Shown: positions 3,026 through 46,572 of the stretch, piece after piece
Layout: every line of letters begins with the position of its first letter
Numbering within the stretch: position 1 is the stretch's first letter
Source of the DNA: Octopus bimaculoides
Taxonomy: Eukaryota
Reading direction: 5' to 3'
Assembly: GCF_001194135.2 (NCBI RefSeq)
Contig: NC_068986.1
Coordinates: 73,406,279-73,456,256 of the forward strand
DNA length: 49,978 nt
Notes under the pieces: model-generated
Database searches by the model: none
What the model saw: only the letters and a program-made list of their open reading frames with translations
Told to the model about the DNA's origin: nothing
Position numbers and translations under genes: made by a program

Positions 3026-3241
3026 CAGTATTTCCCAACATCTTTACCCCCAGGCCCCACTATAACTTTCCAGAAAAGTGTAAGCCCCACTGGTGGTTGG
3101 GAAAAAACAACTTTATATCTTTGATATTTCGTAATTATAAACTTTCCTTAAAGAAATATCCACACCAGGGCTATACTGTAGCTAACAGTCTTCACACAGT
3201 ATGCTTGGCTGGAGGGATTGGTTTGGCTAGGTTGAGTATAT

Positions 3242-3626
3242 TTGTTGTTGGCACTCCATCGCTTATGATGTCGAGGGTTCCAGTTGATCTGATCAACGGA
3301 ACAGCCTGCTCGTGAAATTAACGTGCAAGTGGCTGAGCACTCCACAGACACGTGTGCCCTTAACGTAGTTCTCGGGGATATTCAGCGTGACACAGTGTGA
3401 CAAGGCTGACCCTTTGAATTACAGGCACAACAGAAACAGGAAGTAAGAGTGAGAGAAAGTTGTGGTGGAAGAGTACAGCAGGGTTTGCCACCATCCCCTG
3501 CCGGAGCCTCGTGGAGCTTTAGGTGTTTTCGCTCAATAAACACTCACAACACCCGGTCTGGGAATCGAAACTGCGATCCTATGACCGTGAGTCCGCTGCC
3601 CTAACCACTGGGCCATTGCGCCTCCA
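3242..3626 (-). mobile_element. Full-length tRNA-headed SINE family C with (CAA)n tail
   Basis: Reverse complement starts GGAGGCGCAATGGCCCAGTGGTTAGGG (A box)...GTTTCGATTCCC (B box); high similarity to 18286, 31653 and 38085. Confidence 0.9.
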
Positions 3627-8075: not shown

Positions 8076-8443
8076 GCAGGAGTGGCTGTGTGGTAAGTAG
8101 CTTGCTTACCAACCACATGGCTCCGGGTTCAGTCCCACTGCATAGCACCTTGGGCAATTTTCTTCTACTATAGCCTCGGGCCGACCAAAGCCTTGTGAGT
8201 GGATTTGGTAGATGGAAACTGAAAGAAGCCTATCGTGTATATGTATATATATATATATGTGTGTGTCTGTGTTTGTCCCCCTAACATTGCTTGACAATCG
8301 ATGCTGGTGTGTTTACGTCCCCATAACTTAGCGGTTCAGCATAAGAGACCGATACTAGGCTTACAAAGAATAAGTCCTGAGGTCGATTTGTTCGACTAAA
8401 GGGCGGTGCTCCAGCATGGCCGCAGTCAAATGACTGAAACAAG

Positions 8444-8444
<1 letters not shown>
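8072..8444 (+). mobile_element. Full-length tRNA-headed SINE family A (central TA/TG microsatellite)
   Basis: GGCGCAGGAGTGGCTGTGTGGTAAG head, GGGTTCAGTCCC B-box-like motif, ccttgggcaa block, microsatellite, 3' module ending tgactgaaacaagtaa. Confidence 0.9.
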
Positions 8445-8493
<49 letters not shown>

Positions 8494-13380: not shown

Positions 13381-14552
13381 TACTATACTATGTCTTACAG
13401 TAACAAAACCATCCCACTACTATCTCATATTACAGATAGCAATCCACTCCATTCCTTAACTACACAGCTATGTCTGAGTCTATTAAATGTGACTTCGTTA
13501 AGCAACAAGTCTAAAGTTATAAATTTTCTATTTGCACAATTTTATCTCACTGTATTACATAACATTGCTTGAATCAATGCTAGAACCTCTATGCTATTGC
13601 TTGACATGCTCTAACTAACAACCAATACTCCCTTAAAATATACCCTATTCAAAAATGCAAGACTTATCGATTGATGTGGTCTTAGATTAATAGTCTTGTC
13701 TGGAATATCTTCGTTGGTTCATGCAGTACTAAACAACAATATAACATAGAATGAAGTACACAAATGTTTTATTTATAAACAAACATTGCTTTCTTATGAA
13801 CTGTGAACTTCTTTAAATCAATCTTCAAATTGTAATATTCAGCAAACATAGTTTTGCTACATACACAACATAACTATATTTGGACCATCAAACACACTGT
13901 ATATCTATATATTTATTAGTGACAAAAGTAGTATTAATATTCAGATGTAATATTTATCCCCACTTAAACATGAATGTTCTGTGAGAACAAACTATACTGT
14001 GGTAGATATCAAGAGAGAAACTCTCATATTGGCTTTTGGTGCAGAATGTATTTGCTCTATCTATATTTTTGCTCTGGTGTCATTTTAGCATGTAGTCCAC
14101 CTGGCCATTTACACTTTAGCATGCAGTCTCACACTAATCCTAGCCCTTAACTCTTATCCGAATCCAGAACAGCATAGACTACAGATACTGCAGTAGACTG
14201 CATGCTAAAGTAGCATCTTTTTCTATACATAATTATATACTTGTACCACTATACACCAGGCTTGTATATATATTTGTACCACTGTACATACCATTTAGCT
14301 ATATATTTGTACTGCTATAGACACAACATGACTTTATTTTTGTGCTTCAAGCATCTAATATGAATATATATATATATGTATGTATATATATATATATATA
14401 TATATACATATATATATACATGTGTATATGTATATATGTATACATATATAATGATAAATCACATACCCGTATGTTTGTGTATACTTGTATCTCAATATAT
14501 CCCACATGACTCTCTTTCTCTCTGTCTCTTTGTCTCTCTCCACACACACACA

Positions 14553-14707
14553 CATATGATAGGCTTCTTTCAGTTCCTGTCTACCAAATCCACTCACAAG
14601 GCTTTGGTTGGCCTGAGGCTATAGTAGAAGACACTCGTCCAAGGTGGTACGTGGTGGGACTGAACCTGGAACCATACGGTTGGGAAGCAAGCTTCTTGCC
14701 ACACAGC

Positions 14708-17822: not shown

Positions 17823-18285
17823 AAGGGGTTGTATGATTGTGTATAGAGGAATATATTATTCAAAGGAATTCCAACTCTGTCTGTTTTTTATGTTTTATTC
17901 ATATTCTTATAATATTAATGTAGGATATAGAATATATAGTATATATAGCAGGTATAGTAAAATGAAATGAAGTATTGATTGTCCTACATATGTATATATG
18001 TAGTTATTACATACTCAACTTCTGAAATGTTTTACAAATTGCACAGGCTTCCCTCTATCCTGGATTGTTATGTCTCATATATATGAAATATATTCCATCC
18101 TTTCTTGTAATCTGGTAAACATGAATAAGTGGTGGGGGCTGAGGACTGAATCTTGATGGGTTCCTCTGTCTTGATGACTGTTACTTTACTGACTGCGTTG
18201 TTGTCTATAGCTTGTGAAGCCTTCACAAGCCATTCACAAGCCATTCACCTGTATCTACCTTCCCTAGTAACTATCAATTCACAGT

Positions 18286-18679
18286 GGAGGTGCAATGGCC
18301 CAGTAGTTAGGACAGCGGACTCGCAGTCATAGGATCGCCGTTTTGATTCCCAGACCGGGCGTTGTGAGTGTTTATTGAGTGAAAACACCTAAAAAGCTCC
18401 ACGAGGCTCCGGCAGGGGACGGTGACGAACCCTGCTGTACTCTTCCACCACAACTTTCTCTCACTCTTACTTCCTGTTTCTGTTGTACCTGTAATTCAAA
18501 GGGTCAGCCTTGTCACACTGTGTCACGCTGAATATCCCCGAGAACTACGTTAAGGGTACACGTGTCTGTGGTGTGCTCAGCCACTTGCACGTTAATTTCA
18601 CGAGCAGGCTGTTCAGTTGATCGGATCAATTGGAACCCTCGACGTCGTAAGCGATGGAGTGCCAACAACAACAACACCG
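18286..18679 (+). mobile_element. Full-length SINE family C with 8-bp TSD
   Basis: Head GGAGGTGCAATGGCCCAG, (CAA)n tail; ATTCACAG at 18277-84 and 18680-87. Confidence 0.9.
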
Positions 18680-18699
18680 ATTCACAGAGCATGATGGAA

Positions 18700-18960
18700 C
18701 CTATCTTTCTCTCTCTCTTTTCCCTCTCTCTCTTCCCTCTCTCTCTCTTTTCTCTCCCTCTCTCTCTCTTTTCTCTCCCTCTCTCTCTCTTTTCTCTCCC
18801 TCTCTCTCTCTTTTCCCTCTCTCTCTCTCTTTCCCCTCTCTCTCTCTTTTCCCCCTCTCTCTCTCTTCTCTCTCTCTTTCTCTCTCTTTTCCCTCTCTCT
18901 CTCTTTTCTCTTCTATGTCTCTCTCTCTCTCTCTATCCATCCATCCATCCACCTACCCAC
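18700..18960. repeat. CT-rich compound microsatellite grading into (CCAT)n
   Basis: Direct inspection; it produces the spurious LSLF and ERER ORFs. Confidence 0.9.
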
Positions 18961-19313
18961 CTGTATCTATTTCCTTAGTGACTATCAATTCACAGAGCAT
19001 GATGGACCCTATCTGTCTGTTTGTCTGTCTGTCCATCTCTCCATGCATCCATGCATCCATCCATCAATTCATCCATTCATTGACACACATATACATTTGC
19101 AATGTATCCAAGCGATTAAGAAGTTTCCTCCATAACCATAATGTCCCATGGCAAGGCATCTTGAGCAAATTTCTATAGCTTTTGATCGTGCTATATTTTG
19201 TGTGTGAAATTGGGTTGACAGAAACTGTAAGGAGCTCATCAAATGGATTGTACTAAAGTACTTTCTTATCACACACTCTAAATCATGATAATTCTACCTG
19301 AGAATTATGTTGT

Positions 19314-23377: not shown

Positions 23378-23672
23378 GCGGATTTGGTAGATGGAAACGG
23401 AAAAATACCTGTTGTATATATATATATATTTATGTATGTGCGTGTGTGTTTGTGTCAGTGTTTGTCCCCCACCACTGCTTGACAACTGTTGTGGGTGTGC
23501 TGATATCCCTGTAACTTAGCAGTTTGGTAAAAGAGATCAATGGAATAAGTACAAGGCTTAAACAAATAAAAAGAATTAGCACTCGGGTCAATTTCAATTT
23601 ATTCAACTAAAAATTCTTCAAGGTGGTGCTCCAGCATGGCCACAGTCTAATTACTAAAACAAATAAGATAAA
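23378..23672 (+). mobile_element. SINE family A, 5'-truncated
   Basis: ggatttggtagatggaaac..microsatellite..gtttgtcccc..ggtggtgctccagcatggccacagtc. Confidence 0.8.
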
Positions 23673-24174: not shown

Positions 24175-24610
24175 AAGGTGGTGAGCTGGCAGAAACGTTA
24201 GCATGCTCGGTGAAATGCTTAGCAGTATTTCGTCTGTATTTATGTTCTGAGTTCAAATTCTGCCAAGGTTGACTTTGCCTTTCATCCTTTCAGGGTCGAT
24301 AAGTTAAGTACCAGCTGCGTACTGGGGTCGATCTAATCAACTGGCCCCCACCTCCCCCAAAATGTCGGGCCTTGTGCCTAGAGTAGAAAAGAATTACAGC
24401 AAATGTTGATTTCAAATTTTGGCACAAGGCCAGCAATTTCAGTAGGGGAAGTAAGTCGATTACATCGACCCCACTGTTCAACTGGTACTTGTTTTATTGA
24501 TCTTGAAAGAATGAAAGGCAAAGTTGACTTCAATGGAATTTGAATGTGCAGACAGATGAAATGCTGCTAACATTTTGCCTGACTTGTTAATGATTTTACC
24601 AGCTTGCTAC
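24175..24610. mobile_element. Tail-to-tail inverted pair of SINE B copies
   Basis: Plus copy ~24175-24392, minus copy ~24405-24610. Confidence 0.85.
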
Positions 24611-28123: not shown

Positions 28124-28580
28124 CAGATCCAAGGATCGAGGTGTAGAAAGAAAGTTAGCTTTAAGCAATCCGTAGTAAATATAAAAGACAAAACTTTCAG
28201 GGACAATAGTGGTTTATTGAGGTGGAAGGTTGTGGATATATTTCATGGTGGGTGACCAGGGTTGCCAGGTGTGTGAATAACCACTTCTAAGTTTCTACTT
28301 GCTATGAAACATATGTAGCCTGGATCTTATCTACACTAATCCTTAACTCTTGTATATATGTGTGTGTGTTTGTGTCTCTGTTTGTCTCCCCACCATCACA
28401 CTTGACAACTGATGTTGGTGTGTTTATGTCCCTGTAACTTAGTAGTTTGGCATTAGAGACTGATAAAATAAGTACTAGGCATGCAAAGAATAAGTCCTGG
28501 GGTCGATTTCTTCGACTAAAAAACCCTTTAAGGTGGTGCTCCAGCATGTCCACAGTCAAATGACTGAAACAAGTAAAAGA
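27939..28580 (+). mobile_element. SINE family A interrupted in its central microsatellite by a ~200-bp insert
   Basis: 5' half 27939-28095, (TA)n, insert 28125-28327, 3' half 28345-28580. Confidence 0.8.
28125..28327. mobile_element. Putative short MITE with AGATCCA(A)GG terminal inverted repeats
   Basis: AGATCCAAGG.../...CCTGGATCT flanked by TATC at 28121-24 and 28328-31. Confidence 0.5.
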
Positions 28581-30118: not shown

Positions 30119-30529
30119 NNNNNNNNNNNNNNNNNNNNNNNNNNNNNNNNNNNNNNNNNNNNNNNNNNNNNNNNNNNNNNNNNNNNNNNNNNNNNNNNNN
30201 NNNNNNNNNNNNNNNNNNNNNNNNNNNNNNNNNNNNNNNNNNNNNNNNNNNNNNNNNNNNNNNNNNNNNNNNNNNNNNNNNNNNNNNNNNNNNNNNNNNN
30301 NNNNNNNNNNNNNNNNNNNNNNNNNNNNNNNNNNNNNNNNNNNNNNNNNNNNNNNNNNNNNNNNNNNNNNNNNNNNNNNNNNNNNNNNNNNNNNNNNNNN
30401 NNNNNNNNNNNNNNNNNNNNNNNNNNNNNNNNNNNNNNNNNNNNNNNNNNNNNNNNNNNNNNNNNNNNNNNNNNNNNNNNNNNNNNNNNNNNNNNNNNNG
30501 TGTATACAAATTTAATTTGTGGTCCGTGG

Positions 30530-30608
30530 GAAGAGCCATTTTAACGATGCGTCCTGCCCTACTCTTCGAAACGCCTGTGTTAGAATGGGGGCAGCTGATG
30601 AAGGAAAA
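30530..30608 (+). ncRNA. Candidate non-circularly permuted hammerhead ribozyme
   Basis: GUC (30551-53), GAAA (30568-71) and CTGATGA (30595-601), with stem I (30554-60/30588-94) and stem III (30549-52/30571-74, extendable to 16 bp) in exact register; stem II weak. Confidence 0.55.
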
Positions 30609-31652
30609 CGTTCTCTATGTGGCCTGTGTGTGTTCTGTACTCTGGTTATTATTATTTTTTTGTCTACATTTTGTTTGCAATGTCCTGTACCCAGATATGC
30701 ACCTATATATACAGGTAGACGTAGGTATGCACATACCTGTACGTATATATGCATATACTCATTATTTGTTTTATATATATATAGATATATATATTTATGT
30801 GTATATATATATATGTATATTTATGTATATGTATGTATAGACAAATACACACATGTATTTCCAAATATTTCTAGATAGCTCAAGTAATTTTACTTAAGTA
30901 TCTGACTGCTTATAGCAAACACTCCTCATACATCATCCCACAACTTTGTGCCATCACTTACTGTGTGCTCTGTACCCTCAGGTTCAATATATAAGCCAAA
31001 TACTTTGATTCTAAGCCAGTTAGTTAAGTCATTGATTTTTATCTTGGTTGTTTTCTGTTGAAAGAAAACTAAACACTGGACAAAAGCTTGTTTAAAGAAT
31101 ACGATGGCTTTTTCGCTTTGTTCACTCTCTGTCTCTCTCTATTCCCTAACCTTTCTCTCCCTCTCACTTTTCTATCTTCATTTGTTTTCTCTTTTACTCT
31201 CACTCACTCAGTTTGTCTTTCTCTGAGTCTTTTTGTTCTCTTCTTTCTCTTAGTTTGTGTTTTAAAAACAACAGGTGTTTATGAAAAGGAATTCCTGTTG
31301 ATATTTCAGATATAATAGAAATGGTGTCTCTTCATTCACTACTAAATATACCTATAATATATAAAAATATATGATTATAATACATATTATGCATTATATA
31401 GAATAATATGTACTGTGTATAATAANNNNNNNNNNNNNNNNNNNNNNNNNNNNNNNNNNNNNNNNNNNNNNNNNNNNNNNNNNNNNNNNNNNNNNNNNNN
31501 NNNNNNNNNNNNNNNNNNNNNNNNNNNNNNNNNNNNNNNNNNNNNNNNNNNNNNNNNNNNNNNNNNNNNNNNNNNNNNNNNNNNNNNNNNNNTATATATA
31601 TATATATGTGTGTGTGTTATATAATAACATAATACTAATTCTATATGTATTA

Positions 31653-32039
31653 TTGTTGTTGGCACTCCATCGCTTACAATGTCGAGGGTTCCAGTTGATC
31701 TGATCACCGGAACAGCCTGCTCGTGAAATTAACGTGCAAGTGGCTGAGCACTCCACAGACACGAGTACCCTTAACATAGTTCTCAGGGATATTCAGGGTG
31801 ACACAGTGTGACAAGGGTGACCCTTTGAAATACAGGCACAACAGAAACAGGAAGTAAGAGTGCGAGAAAGTTGTGGTGAAAGAATACAACAGGGTTCGCC
31901 ACCATCCCCTGCCGGAGCCTCGTGGAGCTTTTTAAGTGTTTTCACTCAATAAACACTCACAACGCCCGGTCTGGGAATCGAAACTGTGATCCTATGACCG
32001 TGAGTCCGCTGCCCTAACCACTGGGCCATTGCGCCTCCA
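31653..32039 (-). mobile_element. Full-length SINE family C with TSD
   Basis: CTATATGTATTA at 31641-52 and 32040-51; tRNA-like head at the right end. Confidence 0.9.
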
Positions 32040-32099
32040 CTATATGTATTATATATGTAGTAATAAAATAATGCTAATATATATTATATATAATAATGA

Positions 32100-32699: not shown

Positions 32700-33020
32700 T
32701 GATTTTCTCTGATGATAATGATAGTGGTGATGATGATAATGATGACCAAATTCCACCATTGTTATCACTACCACCACCAACACTGTCACTACCACCACCA
32801 ACACTGTCACTACCACCACCAACACTATCACCATCATCATTAATGCTATCGCCATCATCAATGCTACTGTCACTACAACCACCACCACCACCACCACCAC
32901 CATTGCTGTCGCCGCCACCACCAATGACACCAACATCATCATTGCCACCATCACCACCTCAATAAAAACAGCTAACACCATCACCACCCCTACCGCTGCG
33001 ATCACAGCCTTCCACCAAAT
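32700..33020. repeat. Degenerate (CAC/CAT)n trinucleotide repeat
   Basis: Direct inspection; it produces the polyPro and polyVal ORFs. Confidence 0.85.
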
Positions 33021-33544: not shown

Positions 33545-34085
33545 TGCATTCTACAGCTCACCTATCGATAAATACTACAGCTCACCTAGCAATATGTACT
33601 ATGAACCACTTACAGATAAGTACTATAGCTCTTCTATTGACATGCACTACAGATCACCTGCTATTAAGTACTACATCTCTCCTACTGATATCCACTACGG
33701 ATCAACTATTAATAAATACTATAGACCTTCTATTGGTATGCACTACGGATCAGCTACTAATAAATACTATAGCTCTTCTATTGACATGCACTACAGATCA
33801 ACTATTAATAAACACTATAGCTCTTCTGTTGATATGCACTATGGATCACCTACTAACAAGTACTATAGCTCATTTTTTGTTATGGCTCAACTAGCTCACC
33901 TATTAATACGACTCATTTACCAATACTACATGTCATTTAACACTGATACTACAGCTGAACTGCTACTGCTGCTACAGCTCAACTACAGCTCATCTATCAT
34001 CAGCACTTCATTTCAATTATCACCCATACTACAGCTCATCTACTACCAATACTCTAGCTTAATTACCATCATTACTACAGCTTAA
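33545..34085. repeat. 48-bp minisatellite (five units 33617-33856) built from 24-bp subunits, decaying into actacagctca motifs
   Basis: Unit starts at 33617, 33665, 33713, 33761, 33809 and 33857. Confidence 0.85.
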
Positions 34086-35596: not shown

Positions 35597-35990
35597 TAAG
35601 GTGGTGAGCTGGAAGAATTGTTAGCATGCTGGGCAAAATACTTTATGGTATTTCATCCATCTTTATGTTCTGAGTTCAAATTCTGCTGAGGTTGACTTTG
35701 CCTTTCATCCTTTCGGGGCAGATAAAACAAGTATCTGTTGAGTGTGAAGGTTGATGTAATTGACTTATCCCCTCCCCTGAAATTGCTGGCCTTGTACCAA
35801 AATTTAAAATTAATAATAACAATGATTTTTAATATTGGTATATGACCAACAAATTAGTATGTAACTGGTACTTGTTTTATTGTCTTGCCTTCTTGAAAGG
35901 GTAAAAAGTAAAAGTGACCTGGTGTGATTTGAACTAAATACTATAAGACATTTTGCATGACTCGTTAACACTTCTGCCAATGAACTGCTG
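35597..35990. mobile_element. Tail-to-tail SINE B pair (minus copy diverged)
   Basis: Plus copy 35597-35815, minus copy ~35830-35990. Confidence 0.7.
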
Positions 35991-36716: not shown

Positions 36717-37096
36717 TCTTTTACTTGTTTCAGTCAATTGACTGCGGCCATGCTGGAGCATCGCCTTTAGTCGAGCAGATCTTTGTAAGCCTAGTACTTA
36801 TTCTATCAGTATCTTTTTGCCGAACCACTAAGTTATGGGGACGTAAACACACCAGCATCGGTTGTCAAGCGATGCTGGGGGGACAAACATAGACACACAA
36901 ACATATATACACACACATACATATATATATACATATATATGACGGGCTTCTTTCAGTTTCCGTCTACCAAATCCACTCACAAGGCTTTGGTCGGCCCGAG
37001 GCTATAGTAGAAGACACTTGCCCAAGGTGCCACGCAGTGGGACTGAACCCAGAACCATGTGGTTGGTAAGCAAGCTACTTACTACACAGCCACTCC
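36715..37096 (-). mobile_element. SINE family A, young, head runs into the gap
   Basis: High identity to the reverse complement of 8072-8444 and to 43592-43966. Confidence 0.9.
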
Positions 37097-38084: not shown

Positions 38085-38432
38085 GGAGACGCAATGGCCT
38101 AGTGGTTAGGGCAGCGGACTCACAGTCATAGGATCGTGGTTTCGATTCCCAGACTGGGTGTTGTGAGTGTTTATTGAGTGAAAACACCTAAAGCTCCACG
38201 AGGCTGCGGCAGGGGATGGTGGCGAACCCTTCCTGTTTCTGTTGTGCCTGTAATTCAAAGGGTCAGCCATGTCACACTGTGTCACACTGAATATCCCTGA
38301 GAACTACGTTAAGGGTACACGTGTCTGTGGAGTGCTCAGCCACTTGCATGTTAATTTCATGAGCAGGCTGTTCAGTTGATCGGATCAACTGGAACCCTCG
38401 ACGTTGTAAGCGACGGAGTGCCAACAACAACA
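38085..38432 (+). mobile_element. SINE family C with a ~40-bp internal deletion
   Basis: ggcgaaccct joins directly to tcctgtttct at ~38230, unlike the 18286 copy. Confidence 0.9.
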
Positions 38433-38472
<40 letters not shown>

Positions 38473-41060: not shown

Positions 41061-41349
41061 TTACAAGTTAATATTGTAAACTTAAAGGTTCTTATTACCA
41101 ACCTCTGTTCTTTCTGTATTTAGCTATCCATAACTTATTGCTATGATACATTGAACTTCTAATGTAGGCTTCCAAGAAAGAGAAAGATTTTTGTTACTGA
41201 CTGACAGAAGTAGCTTGAACTTATTTCATTACACTCATTTCTAAATCTTTTAATGTATTTTTACTACAAGCAAATGCATGTAACACACTATTTCAAGAGA
41301 ACCATATGGCAATTTCAAGGATTCCATTGCTAACACACATATATGTATG

Positions 41350-41550
41350 TGTGTGTGTGTGTGTGTGTGTGTTGTTTTCTCCCCACCATCACCACTTGAC
41401 TTGGTGTGTTTTGAAGTCCTTGTAACTTAGCGGTTTGGCAAAAGAGAATAATAGAATAAATACCAGGCTTTAAAAAATAAGTACTGGGGTTAATTCATTT
41501 TTATAAGAGAAATTCTTGAAGGTGGTGCCCCAGCATGGTCACAGTCTAAT
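41350..41550 (+). mobile_element. SINE family A, 3' half (another at 42100-42350)
   Basis: (TG)n..cttgac..gtaacttagcggtttggcaaaagaga..ggtggtgccccagcatgg. Confidence 0.75.
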
Positions 41551-43394
41551 GATTGAAACTAGTAAAAGATACTCCTGGAGAACCTCGAGTGGTCTAGAAC
41601 CCTCTTTGACAACATTCTGGTAACCCCAGGGAAGTGGAGCTCTCTTGCCTTCTGAGGCAATTCACCTAGGAGAAGGCCGCTCCAGTGTAAAACCCACAGC
41701 TTGATGGTCATCGCAGCCGTCTTAACCTGTTGGGCCACTGAAGTCAGATTTCCAAATCTAAAGAGTGGGACTGGGTTGTCTTCACTGACTCTCACTTTAA
41801 AACAGATAAGTACAGATAAGAAGAAACGCCTTATAGCATCAAGGATTGATTTACATAGCTACTTGAGGGCATACTACTCTTCCTCATGATCTTTGGGCAT
41901 AAAAGAAGCTGTCATCACTCTTGTACATTCATCACATCCTATTAATTTGCTAGAGATCCCATTGCATGTTTTGAAAATTCTTTGAGGCTGAGTTACTTAC
42001 TGCTCTGTCTTCTCATATCAAGTAAAGCTACATCTAAATTCCATTGGAACTACATGCTTCCTATTTCTAACCATGATTGCATTAATTGATTGTGTGTGTA
42101 TGTATGTGTGTGTGTGTGTATGTCTTTGTTTGTCCCCCCCTCCCACCACTTGACAACCGGTGTTGGTCTGTTTATGTCCCTGTAACTTAGCTGTCTGGTA
42201 TAAGAGACCAATAGAAATAAATGTCAGGCTTAAAAAGAAAATAAGTATTGGTGTTGATTATTCATCTAAAAAATTCCCCATGGCAGTGCCCCAGTATGGC
42301 CACAGTTTAATGACTGAAACAAGTAAAAGATAAAAAAAAAATAAAAGATATTCTCAGTTGGTCATGCTTAAGAATCCAGCAAGAAAGCATAATGACTCTT
42401 CAGATGGGACTCTATAGAGGAGGTGCCTGAGGGGACCCTGCTTTCATGGCCCTCCAAAAGGAATAGTAAGTGGTAAAAATGAATTGCTGGATGTTTGTTT
42501 AGCAGTATTACAAAACAAAAAAAAAAAAAAAATTCAGGTTTTCTTACTTTGTAACCCAGTTAAAGATGGTGTTTGACAATGGTTCTTTGATTTATCAAAA
42601 CATATTATGCAACCTTACTACAAAAATTGTTTTCATGTACTTGTGTGACAAAACAAAACACATTGCCAGAGGGCACAGATTACCTAGAATGGGCTCCTGT
42701 TAATTCTTTATCTTTGTGCTATCATTCATTTGACAATAATCAAAGAAATCCTACTGTTGTCTCTCATATAGCGCTGGTTCATTTTACGTTATGGCAAACT
42801 ACAATTTAGCCCTTTTGTAAACCAGAGAACTCTTTTGCTTCTTTCATTCAATGAACTGTATTTTGAATCACAATAAAGAATAGCAGATACAAGTGCAAAT
42901 TGTGAAATAGATGAATGGTTAAAGTTACACAATAGAAGTTTTTGTTTGTTTTTTATTATGTGTGTGTGAGTGTGTGTGTGGATATGTGTATGTATATTTG
43001 TTCTTACATGCACACACACATAAACACATGGGAGAAGACAGAAATGTCAACGATAGAAACATCGTTTATGAATATTTACAGTGAGAAGAAAATAATCTTG
43101 TATCCAAGAAGAATCTTTATCTCTCATAGTGACATAGTAAACATGTCTTAACCAGTGAAAATAGATCTGTAGTCATTGACCTCTAGTAGGGTATATTTGA
43201 ATCAATTATATGTTTCCTGTATATGGGTAAATATATATATATATTTATATAGGTTTGCATGCCTCTGTATAAACAAACATCCATATGAATTGTGTGCATA
43301 CATCAAATATACCACCAGCCCAACCGTCACCACCACTACTGTCACTACCGTCATTGCTGTCTCCACTGCTGCCAACACTACCACCACTGTTGTT

Positions 43395-44230
43395 TGTCAT
43401 CATCATCATAATCCATCACTTTTTCCATACATGCACATGTTGAACAGGTTTCCTCGAACATAACATCTCCCCACTTGTTTCTTTCCTTCATCGTCTTTGT
43501 TAAAATTCAACACCCTGAGGTCAATCAGCTTTTTGTCTCTTCTCACCAATCTTCCACTTCCATAAGTTCTTTCCACATGGATTTCTTGGCACTTACTCTT
43601 TTACTTGTTTCAGTCATTTGATTGCGGCCATGCTGGAGCACTGCCTTTTAGTCGAGTAAATCGACCCCAGAACTTATTCTTTGTAAGCCTAGTACTTATT
43701 CTATCGGTCTGTTTTGCTGAACCGCTAAGTTACGGGGACGTAAATACACCAGCATCGATTGTCAAGCGATGTTGGGGAGACAAACACAGACACACAAACA
43801 CACACACATATATATATACATATACATATATACGATGGGCTTCTTTCAGTTTCCGTCTACCAAATCCACTCACAAGGCTTTGGTCGGCCCGAGGCTATAG
43901 TAGAAGACACTTGCCCAAGGTGCCACGCAGTGGGACTGAACCCGAAACCATGTGGTTGGTAAGCAATCTGTCATCTTCCATATATATCATGTCCCTATTG
44001 GTGCACTTTTCTTTCTTGCAGACTACATCTGATTCTTGCACCCATTTTTTTTTTCTTTAATCTCATATGTATGCCATTGTTCTTGCTTAGTAACATTACC
44101 CATCCTAGCTGAGCATGTTCACTTCATTTCTTTCTAATCTTACCAAATCCTCTGCATCCATTTCACTACTGTACAAGAATTGTGCTTCATACATATATGC
44201 AACAGAAGATGTTTTATACTAATGTACTAA
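43395..44230 (-). pseudogene. Old RTE LINE 3' fragment interrupted by a SINE A
   Basis: Minus strand FLYSSEMDAEDLVRLERNEVNML..LQERK..GH (44230-43970), resuming as DLRVLNFNK..RNKWGDVMFEET and a (GAT)n tail (43590-43395). Confidence 0.65.
43592..43966 (-). mobile_element. SINE family A, young, missing the first ~25 nt
   Basis: Near-identical to 36715-37096. Confidence 0.9.
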
Positions 44231-45525: not shown

Positions 45526-46069
45526 CATGTGTATGCCTTGAAAGGAAGTATGAACACTTGTTATAATAAGGTGACACTCTATGGTTCAAGGTTTCTATTG
45601 GGGTCCAAACCAGAATTGTGAAATCTGGGGTCACAGTATTCTTTGTTCTAAGTTATTCATGTGTGGTCACTACAAGATGAAATATCAACTACGTGTGTGT
45701 TTGTGTGCCGACTCATGCACACACACACACAGAGTGGTATATATGCTTCTTGATATAGCATCTATCATGTTTGTGTCATATATATATATATATATATATT
45801 GCCATCATCATAATCATCACCATAATCATTATAATTTTATGTTCACTTTTTCTATGCTTAGATGGGTCAGAAGGAGTTTGTCAAGGCAGATTTTATTCTT
45901 AGACCAGTTGCTCTTTCTGTTTGTCAACCCTCACCTGTTTCCAAGCGAGGTAATATTTCCTCATGACCAGACATGTTTTCAAGGGAAACTGGAAATGAAC
46001 AACACCATCTGTATAACAGTGGTATTCATTTACAATCATCACAAGACAAAGCTACAAACACACACGCAC

Positions 46070-46336: not shown

Positions 46337-46572
46337 GGGCAGCGAGCTGGCAGAAACGTTAGCACGCCGGGTGAAATGCTTAGTGGTATTTCGTCTGCTG
46401 TTACGTTCTGAGTTCAAATTCTGCCAAGGTTGACTTTGCCTTTCATCCTTTCAGGGTTAATTAAACAAGTACCGATTATATCGACTGGGGTCGATATAAT
46501 CAACTTAATCCGTTTGTCTGTCCTTGTTTGTCCCCTCTGTGTCTAGCCCCTTGTGGGTAGTAAAGAAATAAG
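46337..46572 (+). mobile_element. SINE family B with the alternative tail
   Basis: Young-looking head; tail ttaatccgtttgtctgtccttgtttgtcccctctgtgtctagccccttgtgggtagtaaagaaataag as at 1240-1300. Confidence 0.9.

What the first reader, a model, noticed from the sequence alone, without database searches (positions are those of the whole stretch)
30530..30608. Candidate non-circularly permuted (rearranged) hammerhead ribozyme, possibly acting in trans
Seen: the three hammerhead strands occur in the order [stem III-GUC-stem I] (30547-60), [stem II-GAAA-stem III] (30561-76), [stem I-CUGAUGA-stem II] (30588-608). This is none of the circular types I, II or III. The register is exact: C30554 (after GUC) pairs with G30594 (before C3) in a 7-bp stem I (CTGCCCT/GGGGCAG), and A30571 pairs with U30552. 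Stem III can extend to 16 of 17 bp (30536-52 with 30571-88, one mismatch and one bulge). That leaves the cleavage site and GAA in an 18-nt loop which the adjacent CUGAUGA strand cannot reach in cis, so it would have to come from a second molecule or tandem copy. Stem II is weak with the downstream arm (3 bp after an extra A). GAAGAG at 30530-35 pairs perfectly with CTCTTC (30562-67) and may be the remnant of a preceding CUGAUGA strand. Knowledge (recollection, to verify): rearranged natural hammerheads have been reported only rarely. I cannot tell whether this family is already catalogued.
Basis: partly seen in the sequence, partly recalled or inferred. Interest (0 to 1): 0.9.

Follow-up and report, generated by a model that had tools for sequence, protein, structure and literature searches.

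The report
Lone hammerhead-like motif, probably chance
A single 72-base stretch in repeat-rich animal DNA fits a rare, already published rearranged form of the hammerhead self-cutting RNA (type SGC) in all but one helix, but that weak helix, the lack of any relatives and the expected rate of chance matches make a coincidence the most likely reading.

Summary
At 30549-30605 (+) the three hammerhead strands lie in the order cleavage-site block, GAAA block, CUGAUGA block, with a perfect catalytic core.

This order is not new. It is the "type-SGC" hammerhead of Eckert et al. 2023 (PMC10085705), which cleaves in cis.
- the same 1-nt insertion after CUGAUGA;
- a 2-nt linker from stem I to stem II;
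- a 6-bp fourth helix (30582-87/30609-14) in the published register, with p about 0.003-0.03.

So the "must act in trans" idea is not needed.

Evidence against a real ribozyme:
- Stem II is marginal: G-C, G.U, A-U, A x C, A-U. Validated SGC ribozymes have 5 strong pairs and die when any helix is disrupted.
- There are no Rfam hits, and a model built from published SGC sequences does not recognise it.
- No other copy occurs in the window and no relatives could be retrieved.
- The nested minimum-energy fold buries the cleavage site.

Matches of this quality are expected roughly 0.1-2 times per 2.7-Gb genome by chance.

My verdict: about 80% a fortuitous motif, about 12% a genuine type-SGC hammerhead. 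A genuine one would be the first in a eukaryotic genome. A BLAST against related assemblies and one in vitro cleavage assay would settle it.

The parts
30543..30552 (+). Stem III 5' strand. The core part is GCGU at 30549-52, with U30552 = U16.1. An optional imperfect extension runs over 30543-48.
   Evidence: Pairs U30552-A30571, G51-C72, C50-G73, G49-C74, then a mismatch, then A47-U76, G46.U78, C45-G79, A44-U80, A43-U81
30553..30553 (+). C17. The predicted cleavage site is after this base (GUC triplet).
   Evidence: Sequence. The position follows by analogy with hammerhead numbering.
30554..30560 (+). Stem I 5' strand, CUGCCCU
   Evidence: 7 bp with 30588-94, one of them G.U; duplex -11.7 kcal/mol
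30561..30562 (+). 2-nt linker (AC) joining stem I directly to stem II, the hallmark of type-SGC connectivity
   Evidence: Published SGC rows have 1-4 nt here
30563..30567 (+). Stem II 3' strand, UCUUC (C30567 = 11.1)
   Evidence: Pairs with 30603-07: G-C, G.U, A-U, A x C, A-U
30568..30571 (+). GAAA core (G12 A13 A14 A15.1)
30572..30581 (+). Stem III 3' strand. CGC at 30572-74 is the core part; 30575-81 is either a spacer or an imperfect extension.
   Evidence: The published spacer range is 0-44 nt.
30582..30587 (+). Fourth helix (P4) 5' strand, AGAAUG, directly abutting the stem I 3' strand
   Evidence: 6 bp with 30609-14. The register matches the modal published geometry. p = 0.0034 at that geometry and 0.032 over 12 geometries.
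30588..30594 (+). Stem I 3' strand, GGGGCAG
30595..30601 (+). CUGAUGA core (C3 to A9)
30602..30602 (+). Extra nucleotide (A) between A9 and G10.1. Published SGC ribozymes have one extra nucleotide here, nearly always U.
30603..30607 (+). Stem II 5' strand, GGAAA (G30603 = 10.1)
   Evidence: Only 3 contiguous pairs, 4 of 5 in all. The 3-bp duplex scores +1.8 kcal/mol, against -4.8 and -7.1 in SGC-3 and SGC-1.
30609..30614 (+). Fourth helix (P4) 3' strand, CGUUCU, after the 1-nt linker A30608
30530..30535 (+). GAAGAG, a competitor rather than a part. It is perfectly complementary to 30562-67 and, in the MFE fold, 30532-36 pairs with the P4 3' strand.

Best explanation
This is a fortuitous hammerhead-like sequence, not a ribozyme maintained by selection. 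It is a single-copy stretch in AT-rich, repeat- and microsatellite-laden animal DNA (octopus-like from memory). It happens to carry UC, GAAA and CUGAUGA in the S-G-C order, with four short complementary segments around them. If it were transcribed and folded as drawn, it would be a cis-acting type-SGC hammerhead cutting after C30553. However, its stem II is too weak, and competing pairings are too strong, for that fold to be expected to dominate. What is shown: the motif exists and matches the published architecture. What is inferred: it has no function.
For: 1. Stem II is marginal.
- It has 3 contiguous pairs, one of them G.U, then an A x C mismatch.
- Its duplex energy is +1.8 kcal/mol, against -4.8 (SGC-3) and -7.1 (SGC-1).
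- All 22 published rows my descriptor parsed have 4-6 contiguous stem II pairs, 21 of them 5 or more.
- In SGC-3, disrupting any one of the four helices abolished cleavage (PMC10085705).

2. Chance can supply such a match.
- 4.8e8 simulated base-strands gave 1 hit at the descriptor's minima, matching my analytic rate of about 2.5e-9.
- From that I estimate 6e-12 to 4e-10 per base-strand for a match this good.
- A decoy-core control on the real window gave one independent decoy hit of equal total pairing among 5039 decoy descriptors.
- In random sequence, non-circular orders are as common as circular ones.

3. There is no sign of selection or of a family.
- No second copy occurs in 50 kb that is otherwise full of repeat families.
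- Rfam gives no hit at the gathering threshold or at E <= 10.
- A covariance model of 24 published HRIMA-1 sequences gives only a 14-nt local match, 1.8 bits, E about 3.
- No DNA or protein-level relatives were found in any accessible collection.

4. Folding gives no support.
- The region folds no better than shuffles, z = +0.6.
- The nested MFE extends stem I with CGUC/GAUG, which buries C17 and part of CUGAUGA.
- GAAGAG at 30530-35 competes for the stem II 3' strand.

5. The context is wrong for the known class.
- Published SGC ribozymes come from IMG/M metatranscriptome contigs thought to be circular RNA replicons with a partner ribozyme.
- Here there is no partner ribozyme in the 926-bp contig.
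Against: - The fourth helix is 6 bp in exactly the modal register, p = 0.0034 there and 0.032 over 12 allowed registers.
- The candidate also has the single inserted nucleotide after CUGAUGA, a 2-nt stem I to stem II linker, G10.1-C11.1, C15.2-G16.2 and the optimal GUC triplet.
- No simulated sequence and no decoy was at least as good in every helix.
- Per single window the chance probability is only about 1e-6 to 4e-5 analytically. The decoy control gives an empirical upper bound of about 6e-4.
- The summed helix energy (-16.9 kcal/mol) is like that of the validated SGC-3 (-16.2).
Confidence: 0.8

Rival explanations
1. This is a genuine cis-cleaving type-SGC (non-circularly permuted) hammerhead encoded in an animal genome. 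The RNA spanning about 30543-30614 folds into stems I, II and III plus the fourth helix. The 2'-OH of C30553 attacks its own phosphate, giving a 2',3'-cyclic phosphate and a 5'-OH at C30554. Its role would be processing of a transcript or of a retroelement or circular RNA.
For: - The block order and register are identical to the published class, and the core is perfect.
- The fourth helix is at the modal position, p = 0.003-0.03.
- There is an inserted nucleotide after CUGAUGA.
- The total helix energy is similar to SGC-3 (PMC10085705).
- No null sequence matched it in every helix.
Against: - Stem II is weak and has an A x C mismatch.
- The inserted base is A, not the near-invariant U.
- It is a singleton with no homologues and no covariation.
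- It is not recognised by Rfam or by the HRIMA-1 model.
- Competing folds exist.
- No SGC ribozyme has been reported from any eukaryotic genome, although the authors searched RefSeq 85.
Confidence: 0.12
2. A long 16-bp stem III presents the cleavage site in an 18-nt loop, and the CUGAUGA strand of a second molecule or a tandem copy completes the core in trans or as a dimer.
For: - The long hairpin 30536-88 exists and is moderately stable: -12.9 kcal/mol, z = -2.9.
- An assembly gap lies 30 nt upstream.
Against: - The same blocks can fold in cis as a type-SGC ribozyme, so trans action is not required.
- The gap is flanked by (TA)n, not by a repeat of the unit.
- No second copy exists in the window.
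- GAAGAG is not preceded by a CUGAnGA-like sequence.
- Stem II would be just as weak in trans.
Confidence: 0.02
3. This is a decayed relic of a once-active permuted hammerhead, for example from an integrated ribozyme-bearing circular RNA or retroelement copy, now drifting neutrally.
For: The scaffold is good and only one helix is damaged. A single A30606-to-G change would restore a 5-bp stem II.
Against: - No trace of a surrounding element, partner ribozyme, repeat copies or reverse transcriptase nearby.
- Nothing distinguishes this from chance without homologues.
Confidence: 0.05

Closest known systems
[quoted passage not shown]
   Same: - The 5'-to-3' order is site block, GAAA block, CUGAnGA block.
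- All invariant core bases are present.
- Stem I is joined to stem II by a 1-4 nt linker.
- There is one extra nucleotide between A9 and G10.1.
- A fourth helix has its 5' strand abutting the stem I 3' strand, and its 3' strand starts 6 nt after the inserted base.
- The overall size is about 70-80 nt, and the expected action is in cis.
   Different: - Stem II has 3 contiguous pairs and 4 of 5 in all, against 5 GC-rich pairs.
- The inserted base is A, not U.
- Stem I is CUGCCCU/GGGGCAG, not the conserved AUGUU/AACAU of HRIMA-1.
- There is no detectable sequence homology (CM R1: 1.8 bits).
- It is a DNA locus in an animal genome rather than a metatranscriptome circular-RNA-like contig.
- It is a singleton without covariation and without a partner ribozyme.
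Type-GCS singleton (GCS-1, Caballeronia peredens) from the same paper
   Same: A lone descriptor match with all core features and no covariation. It is a precedent that such singletons can cleave weakly in vitro while their biological relevance stays unclear.
   Different: The block order differs (G-C-S), the host is bacterial, and GCS-1 was tested experimentally.
Canonical type I/III hammerheads of metazoan genomes (Penelope-like elements, retrozymes, HH9/HH10; Rfam hammerhead families)
   Same: The same catalytic core and three-helix logic. They are common in invertebrate genomes (recollection; PMC6155905 and PMC8557442 are listed but I did not read them).
   Different: They are circular permutations with a nested three-way junction, usually multi-copy and tied to a retroelement. 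Rfam finds no such hammerhead here.
Discontinuous or trans-assembled hammerheads (e.g. rodent Clec2 3'UTR; recollection, not checked here)
   Different: Those keep the canonical strand order with a long insertion. Here the strands are adjacent and reordered, and no second molecule is needed.

Membership tests
Type-SGC hammerhead ribozyme | Blocks in the 5'-to-3' order S (stem III-UH-stem I), G (stem II-GAAA-stem III), C (stem I-CUGAnGA-stem II) | tested here: met
   My scans report the order A-C-B, which is S-G-C, and it is the only hit in the window
Type-SGC hammerhead ribozyme | Invariant hammerhead core: CUGAnGA, GAAA, the A15.1-U16.1 pair, H17 not G | tested here: met
   CUGAUGA at 30595-601, GAAA at 30568-71, A30571-U30552, C30553; also G10.1-C11.1 and C15.2-G16.2
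Type-SGC hammerhead ribozyme | Stem I of about 5-7 bp | tested here: met
   7 bp, -11.7 kcal/mol
Type-SGC hammerhead ribozyme | Stem II of about 5 bp, required for cleavage | tested here: inconclusive
   G-C, G.U, A-U, A x C, A-U. That is 3 contiguous pairs at +1.8 kcal/mol, against -4.8 and -7.1 in validated members. All 22 parsed published rows have 4-6 contiguous pairs.
Type-SGC hammerhead ribozyme | Stem III closing the site and GAAA blocks | tested here: met
   4 contiguous pairs, extendable to 10 with one mismatch and one bulge
Type-SGC hammerhead ribozyme | Short linker (typically about 3 nt) joining the stem I 5' strand to the stem II 3' strand | tested here: met
   2 nt (A30561, C30562). 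U16.1 to G12 is 16 nt, against 14-17 in published rows.
Type-SGC hammerhead ribozyme | Fourth helix joining the other sides of stems I and II | tested here: met
   AGAAUG at 30582-87 with CGUUCU at 30609-14, 6 bp in the modal register; p = 0.0034 (modal) and 0.032 (any of 12 registers)
Type-SGC hammerhead ribozyme | Covariation in the helices among homologues (the authors' acceptance criterion) | not testable with these tools
   No homologue was retrievable. The collections hold no cephalopod DNA, and all look-ups were negative.
Type-SGC hammerhead ribozyme | Site-specific self-cleavage abolished by a core mutation | not testable with these tools
   Needs an in vitro transcription assay
Type-SGC hammerhead ribozyme | Usual context: small circular-RNA-like replicons with a ribozyme (often hairpin) of the other polarity | tested here: not met
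   No ribozyme family on either strand of the 926-bp contig at E <= 10. The locus sits among microsatellites in genomic DNA.
HRIMA-1 motif (the sequence family within type SGC) | Conserved stem I AUGUU/AACAU, a U after CUGAnGA, and overall sequence homology | tested here: not met
   Covariance model R1, built from 24 published rows, gives only a 14-nt local hit of 1.8 bits, E about 3, at 30595-608
Canonical hammerheads (Rfam types I, II, III, HH9, HH10) | Circularly permuted three-way junction recognised by the Rfam models | tested here: not met
   No hammerhead hit at the gathering threshold or at E <= 10. The block order is non-circular.

The most novel reading that the evidence does not exclude
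The locus is a working, cis-cleaving type-SGC hammerhead in a cephalopod nuclear genome. It would be the first non-circularly permuted ribozyme found in a eukaryotic genome, and it would be unrelated in sequence to the metatranscriptome family. That would imply either independent origin or capture of a ribozyme-bearing circular RNA.
Probability: 0.1. Interest if true: 0.7.

Novelty: not a real feature. Interest (0 to 1): 0.3.

Why it matters
If real, it would take non-circularly permuted ribozymes out of uncultured circular-RNA replicons and into an animal genome. It would also show that the SGC topology tolerates a different stem set and a minimal stem II. That bears on how easily hammerheads arise by convergence.

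If it is chance, as I think, it is still a useful calibration point. Descriptor-level matches to even a four-helix pseudoknotted ribozyme appear about once per Gb-scale genome. That is why the discoverers of the class demanded covariation.

Tried and rejected
- Rfam at the gathering threshold on the whole window, and at E <= 10 on 30500-30800 and 30500-31425. No ribozyme was found, only low-complexity miRNA-like noise.
- Self-BLAST and the repeat finder. There is no second copy of 30500-30700 in the window.
- Exact 23-mer and gapped stem-I/core patterns in metagenome, genome and viral contigs. Only the gapped pattern hit, giving 14 metagenome loci. Twelve to thirteen of them are one conserved GC-rich bacterial leader that ends in a start codon and has no GAAA, so it is unrelated to the finding.
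- Attempts to reach orthologous DNA through spurious ORFs: exact look-ups of the three ORFs across the locus, one homology search of their concatenated translations, and an exact look-up of 10 other window ORFs. All were negative, so the protein collections do not cover this genome's non-coding DNA.
- A search for real exons or transposon proteins in the window to anchor an orthologous locus. Nothing convincing turned up.
- A covariance model of HRIMA-1 (R1). It does not recognise the candidate. Its best window hit, 45966-46030, lacks CUGAnGA and U16.1.
- Thermodynamic z-scores of the region. They are uninformative (z = +0.6 and +0.2) and cannot score pseudoknots in any case.
- A bacterial-type promoter and terminator scan. 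It is irrelevant for a eukaryotic locus and shows nothing above shuffles.
- I considered and rejected a tRNA-derived SINE (ARAGORN found none) and a canonical hammerhead on the minus strand (no core motifs there).

Full report
**1. What is in the sequence**

The region reads (+ strand): GAAGAG(30530-35) ccauuuuaacgau GCGUC(30549-53) CUGCCCU(30554-60) A CUCUUC(30562-67) GAAA(30568-71) CGC(30572-74) cuguguu AGAAUG(30582-87) GGGGCAG(30588-94) CUGAUGA(30595-601) A GGAAA(30603-07) A CGUUCU(30609-14).

- Stem I is 7 bp, one of them G.U.
- A30571-U30552 is followed by three G/C pairs.
- The long version of stem III has 16 pairs (two G.U), one mismatch and one bulge.
- GAAGAG pairs perfectly with CUCUUC.
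- Stem II with the downstream arm is 3 pairs after an extra A.

My any-order hammerhead scan finds this as the only hit in the window, in the order site block, GAAA block, CUGAUGA block.

**2. Context**

- The window is eukaryotic-looking. It has 25-41% G+C (per 2-kb window), six runs of N, many (TA)n and (CA)n microsatellites and several SINE-like repeat families. From memory the repeats look like octopus SINEs, but I could not verify this.
- The candidate lies 30 nt into a 926-bp contig (30500-31425) bounded by two gaps. The upstream gap follows a (TA)n run.
- There is no tRNA, no convincing exon or transposon protein, and no second copy of 30500-30700 in the window.

**3. The arrangement is already known**

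A literature search led to Eckert, Friedrich, Weinberg and Weinberg, NAR 2023 (PMC10085705). They divide the hammerhead into blocks S (site), G (GAAA) and C (CUGAnGA). [quoted passage not shown] All come from IMG/M metatranscriptome or metagenome data.

- These RNAs are about 80 nt and self-cleave in cis at the predicted site.
- They have two pseudoknots.
- Stem I connects to stem II through a linker of typically 3 nt.
- A fourth helix ties together the other sides of stems I and II.
- In SGC-3, disrupting any one of the four helices abolished cleavage, and compensatory changes restored it.

The inference that the CUGAUGA strand must come from another molecule is not needed.

**4. Threading the candidate onto the published architecture**

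The alignment rows in the supplement and the oligo-derived SGC-1 and SGC-3 sequences give this register: stem III 5', UH, stem I (5-7), linker (1-4), stem II 3' (5), GAAA, stem III 3', 0-44 nt, P4 5' abutting stem I 3', CUGAnGA, one extra nucleotide (nearly always U), stem II 5' (5), a linker of 1 nt in most rows (2-3 in some), P4 3'.

My descriptor parses 22 of 37 transcribed rows; the rest fail on OCR errors or rarer variants. In most of the parsed rows it returns the extra nucleotide, P4 abutting stem I, and P4 3' starting 6 nt after the insertion.

The candidate has exactly this register:
- an inserted A30602;
- a 5-position stem II;
- a 1-nt linker, A30608;
- a 6-bp P4, AGAAUG/CGUUCU, directly abutting GGGGCAG;
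- a 2-nt stem I to stem II linker.

Randomising the two flanks gives P4 >= 6 bp at the modal register with p = 0.0034, and at any of 12 plausible registers with p = 0.032.

**5. How rare is this by chance?**

This comes from 400 first-order Markov windows. Non-circular orders were as frequent as circular ones.
- For the four-helix SGC descriptor, 4.8e8 simulated base-strands gave one hit at the minima (I 5, II 3, III 3, P4 4) and none as good as the candidate. That agrees with my analytic rate of about 2.5e-9.
- By the same calculation (my inference, not a tool output), a match at least as good in every helix is expected at about 6e-12 to 1.5e-11 per base-strand. One with the same total number of pairs is expected at about 4e-10.
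- I also ran a control on the real sequence with 5039 decoy descriptors: permuted core heptamers and permuted GAAA. It gave one independent decoy hit, with the same total pairing as the candidate but a different split, and none as good in every helix.

So the match is impressive for one window, yet it is about what the best chance hit in a Gb-sized genome looks like. The discoverers expected such false positives and accepted only candidates with covariation.

**6. Evidence against a working ribozyme**

- Stem II is G-C, G.U, A-U, A x C, A-U. The contiguous 3-bp duplex scores +1.8 kcal/mol including initiation. SGC-3 scores -4.8 and SGC-1 scores -7.1. Every parsed published row has 4-6 contiguous pairs.
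- The inserted base is A rather than U.
- The summed helix energy (-16.9) is similar to SGC-3 (-16.2), but almost all of it sits in stem I.
- The nested MFE of the 79-nt core keeps stem I and extends it with C30550-C30553 pairing to G30597-G30600. This buries the scissile C and part of CUGAUGA. In the validated ribozymes the MFE contains native P4 (both) and stem III (SGC-3).
- GAAGAG upstream competes for the stem II 3' strand, and in the 101-nt MFE 30532-36 pairs with the P4 3' strand.
- The region folds no better than shuffles, z = +0.6. Nested folding cannot score the pseudoknotted fold, so this is weak evidence.
- Rfam 15 gives no ribozyme hit on either strand, even at E <= 10.
- A covariance model I built from 24 published HRIMA-1 rows (stem III and P4 as pairs) matches only CUGAUGA-GG locally: 1.8 bits, E about 3.
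- No partner ribozyme, tandem copy or retroelement is visible.

**7. Homologues**

None could be obtained.
- DNA patterns found nothing related in the metagenome, prokaryote-genome or viral collections.
- The protein-indexed collections hold neither the three spurious ORFs that cross the locus, nor their relatives, nor ten other ORFs of the window.

Conservation and covariation, which would decide the matter, are therefore untested.

**8. Weighing**

Posterior odds of real against chance are roughly the expected number of genuine SGC ribozymes in this genome divided by the expected number of chance matches (0.03-2). That ratio is then reduced by the improbability of so weak a stem II in a real member.

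No SGC ribozyme has been reported from any eukaryote. The authors searched RefSeq 85, which from memory already held an octopus assembly. A multi-copy family would probably have shown covariation.

My estimates:
- about 0.8 for a fortuitous motif;
- about 0.12 for a genuine cis-acting type-SGC hammerhead;
- about 0.05 for a decayed relic;

Detectable weak cleavage in vitro is somewhat more likely than biological function. The lone type-GCS match in the same paper cleaved without evidence of relevance.

**9. Mechanism if it were real**

[quoted passage not shown] C30553 would be the nucleotide 5' of the scissile phosphate. The products would be a 5' fragment ending in a 2',3'-cyclic phosphate at C30553 and a 3' fragment starting at C30554. 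This follows from established hammerhead chemistry and the published SGC mapping. Nothing of it is shown for this locus.

**10. Novelty and score**

If genuine, the locus would be a new and taxonomically surprising member of a known kind. On present evidence I class it as most likely not a real feature. I keep a 10% novel case because the test is cheap.

Noticed in passing
window 30693-30758 (+): TA-rich imperfect palindrome about 80 nt downstream of the candidate. It folds into a long hairpin (-24.7 kcal/mol, z = -3.2; 1 of 200 shuffles as good). It draws only sub-threshold miRNA-like Rfam hits (mir-1277 and mir-297, 25-26 bits against gathering scores of 81-90). Probably a microsatellite-derived palindrome.
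   Followed up: partly
It is not part of the MFE of the larger region, and it competes with the fourth helix of the SGC fold.
   Followed up: yes
window 45966-46030 (+): Best window hit of my HRIMA-1 covariance model (17.7-21 bits). It shares CAUGUUU...GAAAC and two helices, but has CUGUAUA instead of CUGAnGA and A at position 16.1. It is a chance partial resemblance, not a ribozyme.
   Followed up: yes
window, e.g. 1076-1650, 24183-24396, 35606-35819, 46344-46473; 8242-8450, 23431-23670, 28351-28580, 41336-41569, 42097-42330; 14504-14693, 36887-37076, 43780-43969: Several interspersed SINE-like repeat families at 60-92% identity, often adjacent to TG/TA microsatellites, plus six assembly gaps. 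From memory they resemble the abundant octopus SINEs. The organism was not verified.
   Followed up: no
window 3242-3520, 18283-18696, 31618-32041, 38229-38465: Direct and inverted copies (89-96% identical, 200-414 nt) of another repeat. ORFs through two copies (18562-18978 and 31394-31777) share a peptide-like stretch (CSATCTLISRAGCS..INWNPR..KRWSANNNN), and 3151-3381 carries the first part of it. Possibly a young transposon fragment.
   Followed up: no
window 32753-32959 and 33551-33886: Two minisatellite-like arrays, with periods of about 21 nt and 24 nt, lying inside long but low-complexity ORFs. They are probably non-coding tandem repeats.
   Followed up: no
window about 38158 (- strand): The only independent decoy-core hit of the SGC descriptor control (stem I 5, stem II 3, stem III 3, P4 8 bp). 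It shows that the real sequence can supply four-helix coincidences of equal total pairing.
   Followed up: partly
L002-L014 (soil metagenome contigs), e.g. L004:886-1009 (-): My stem-I/core pattern pulled out 12-13 related contigs by chance. They share a conserved, GC-rich, strongly structured leader of about 115 nt that ends at the ATG inside CUGAUGA. The gene begins M-T-D-P-A-S-L-F-R. There is no Rfam family, and the ten aligned sequences, which are closely related, show almost no covariation. Possibly an unannotated cis-regulatory leader.
   Followed up: partly
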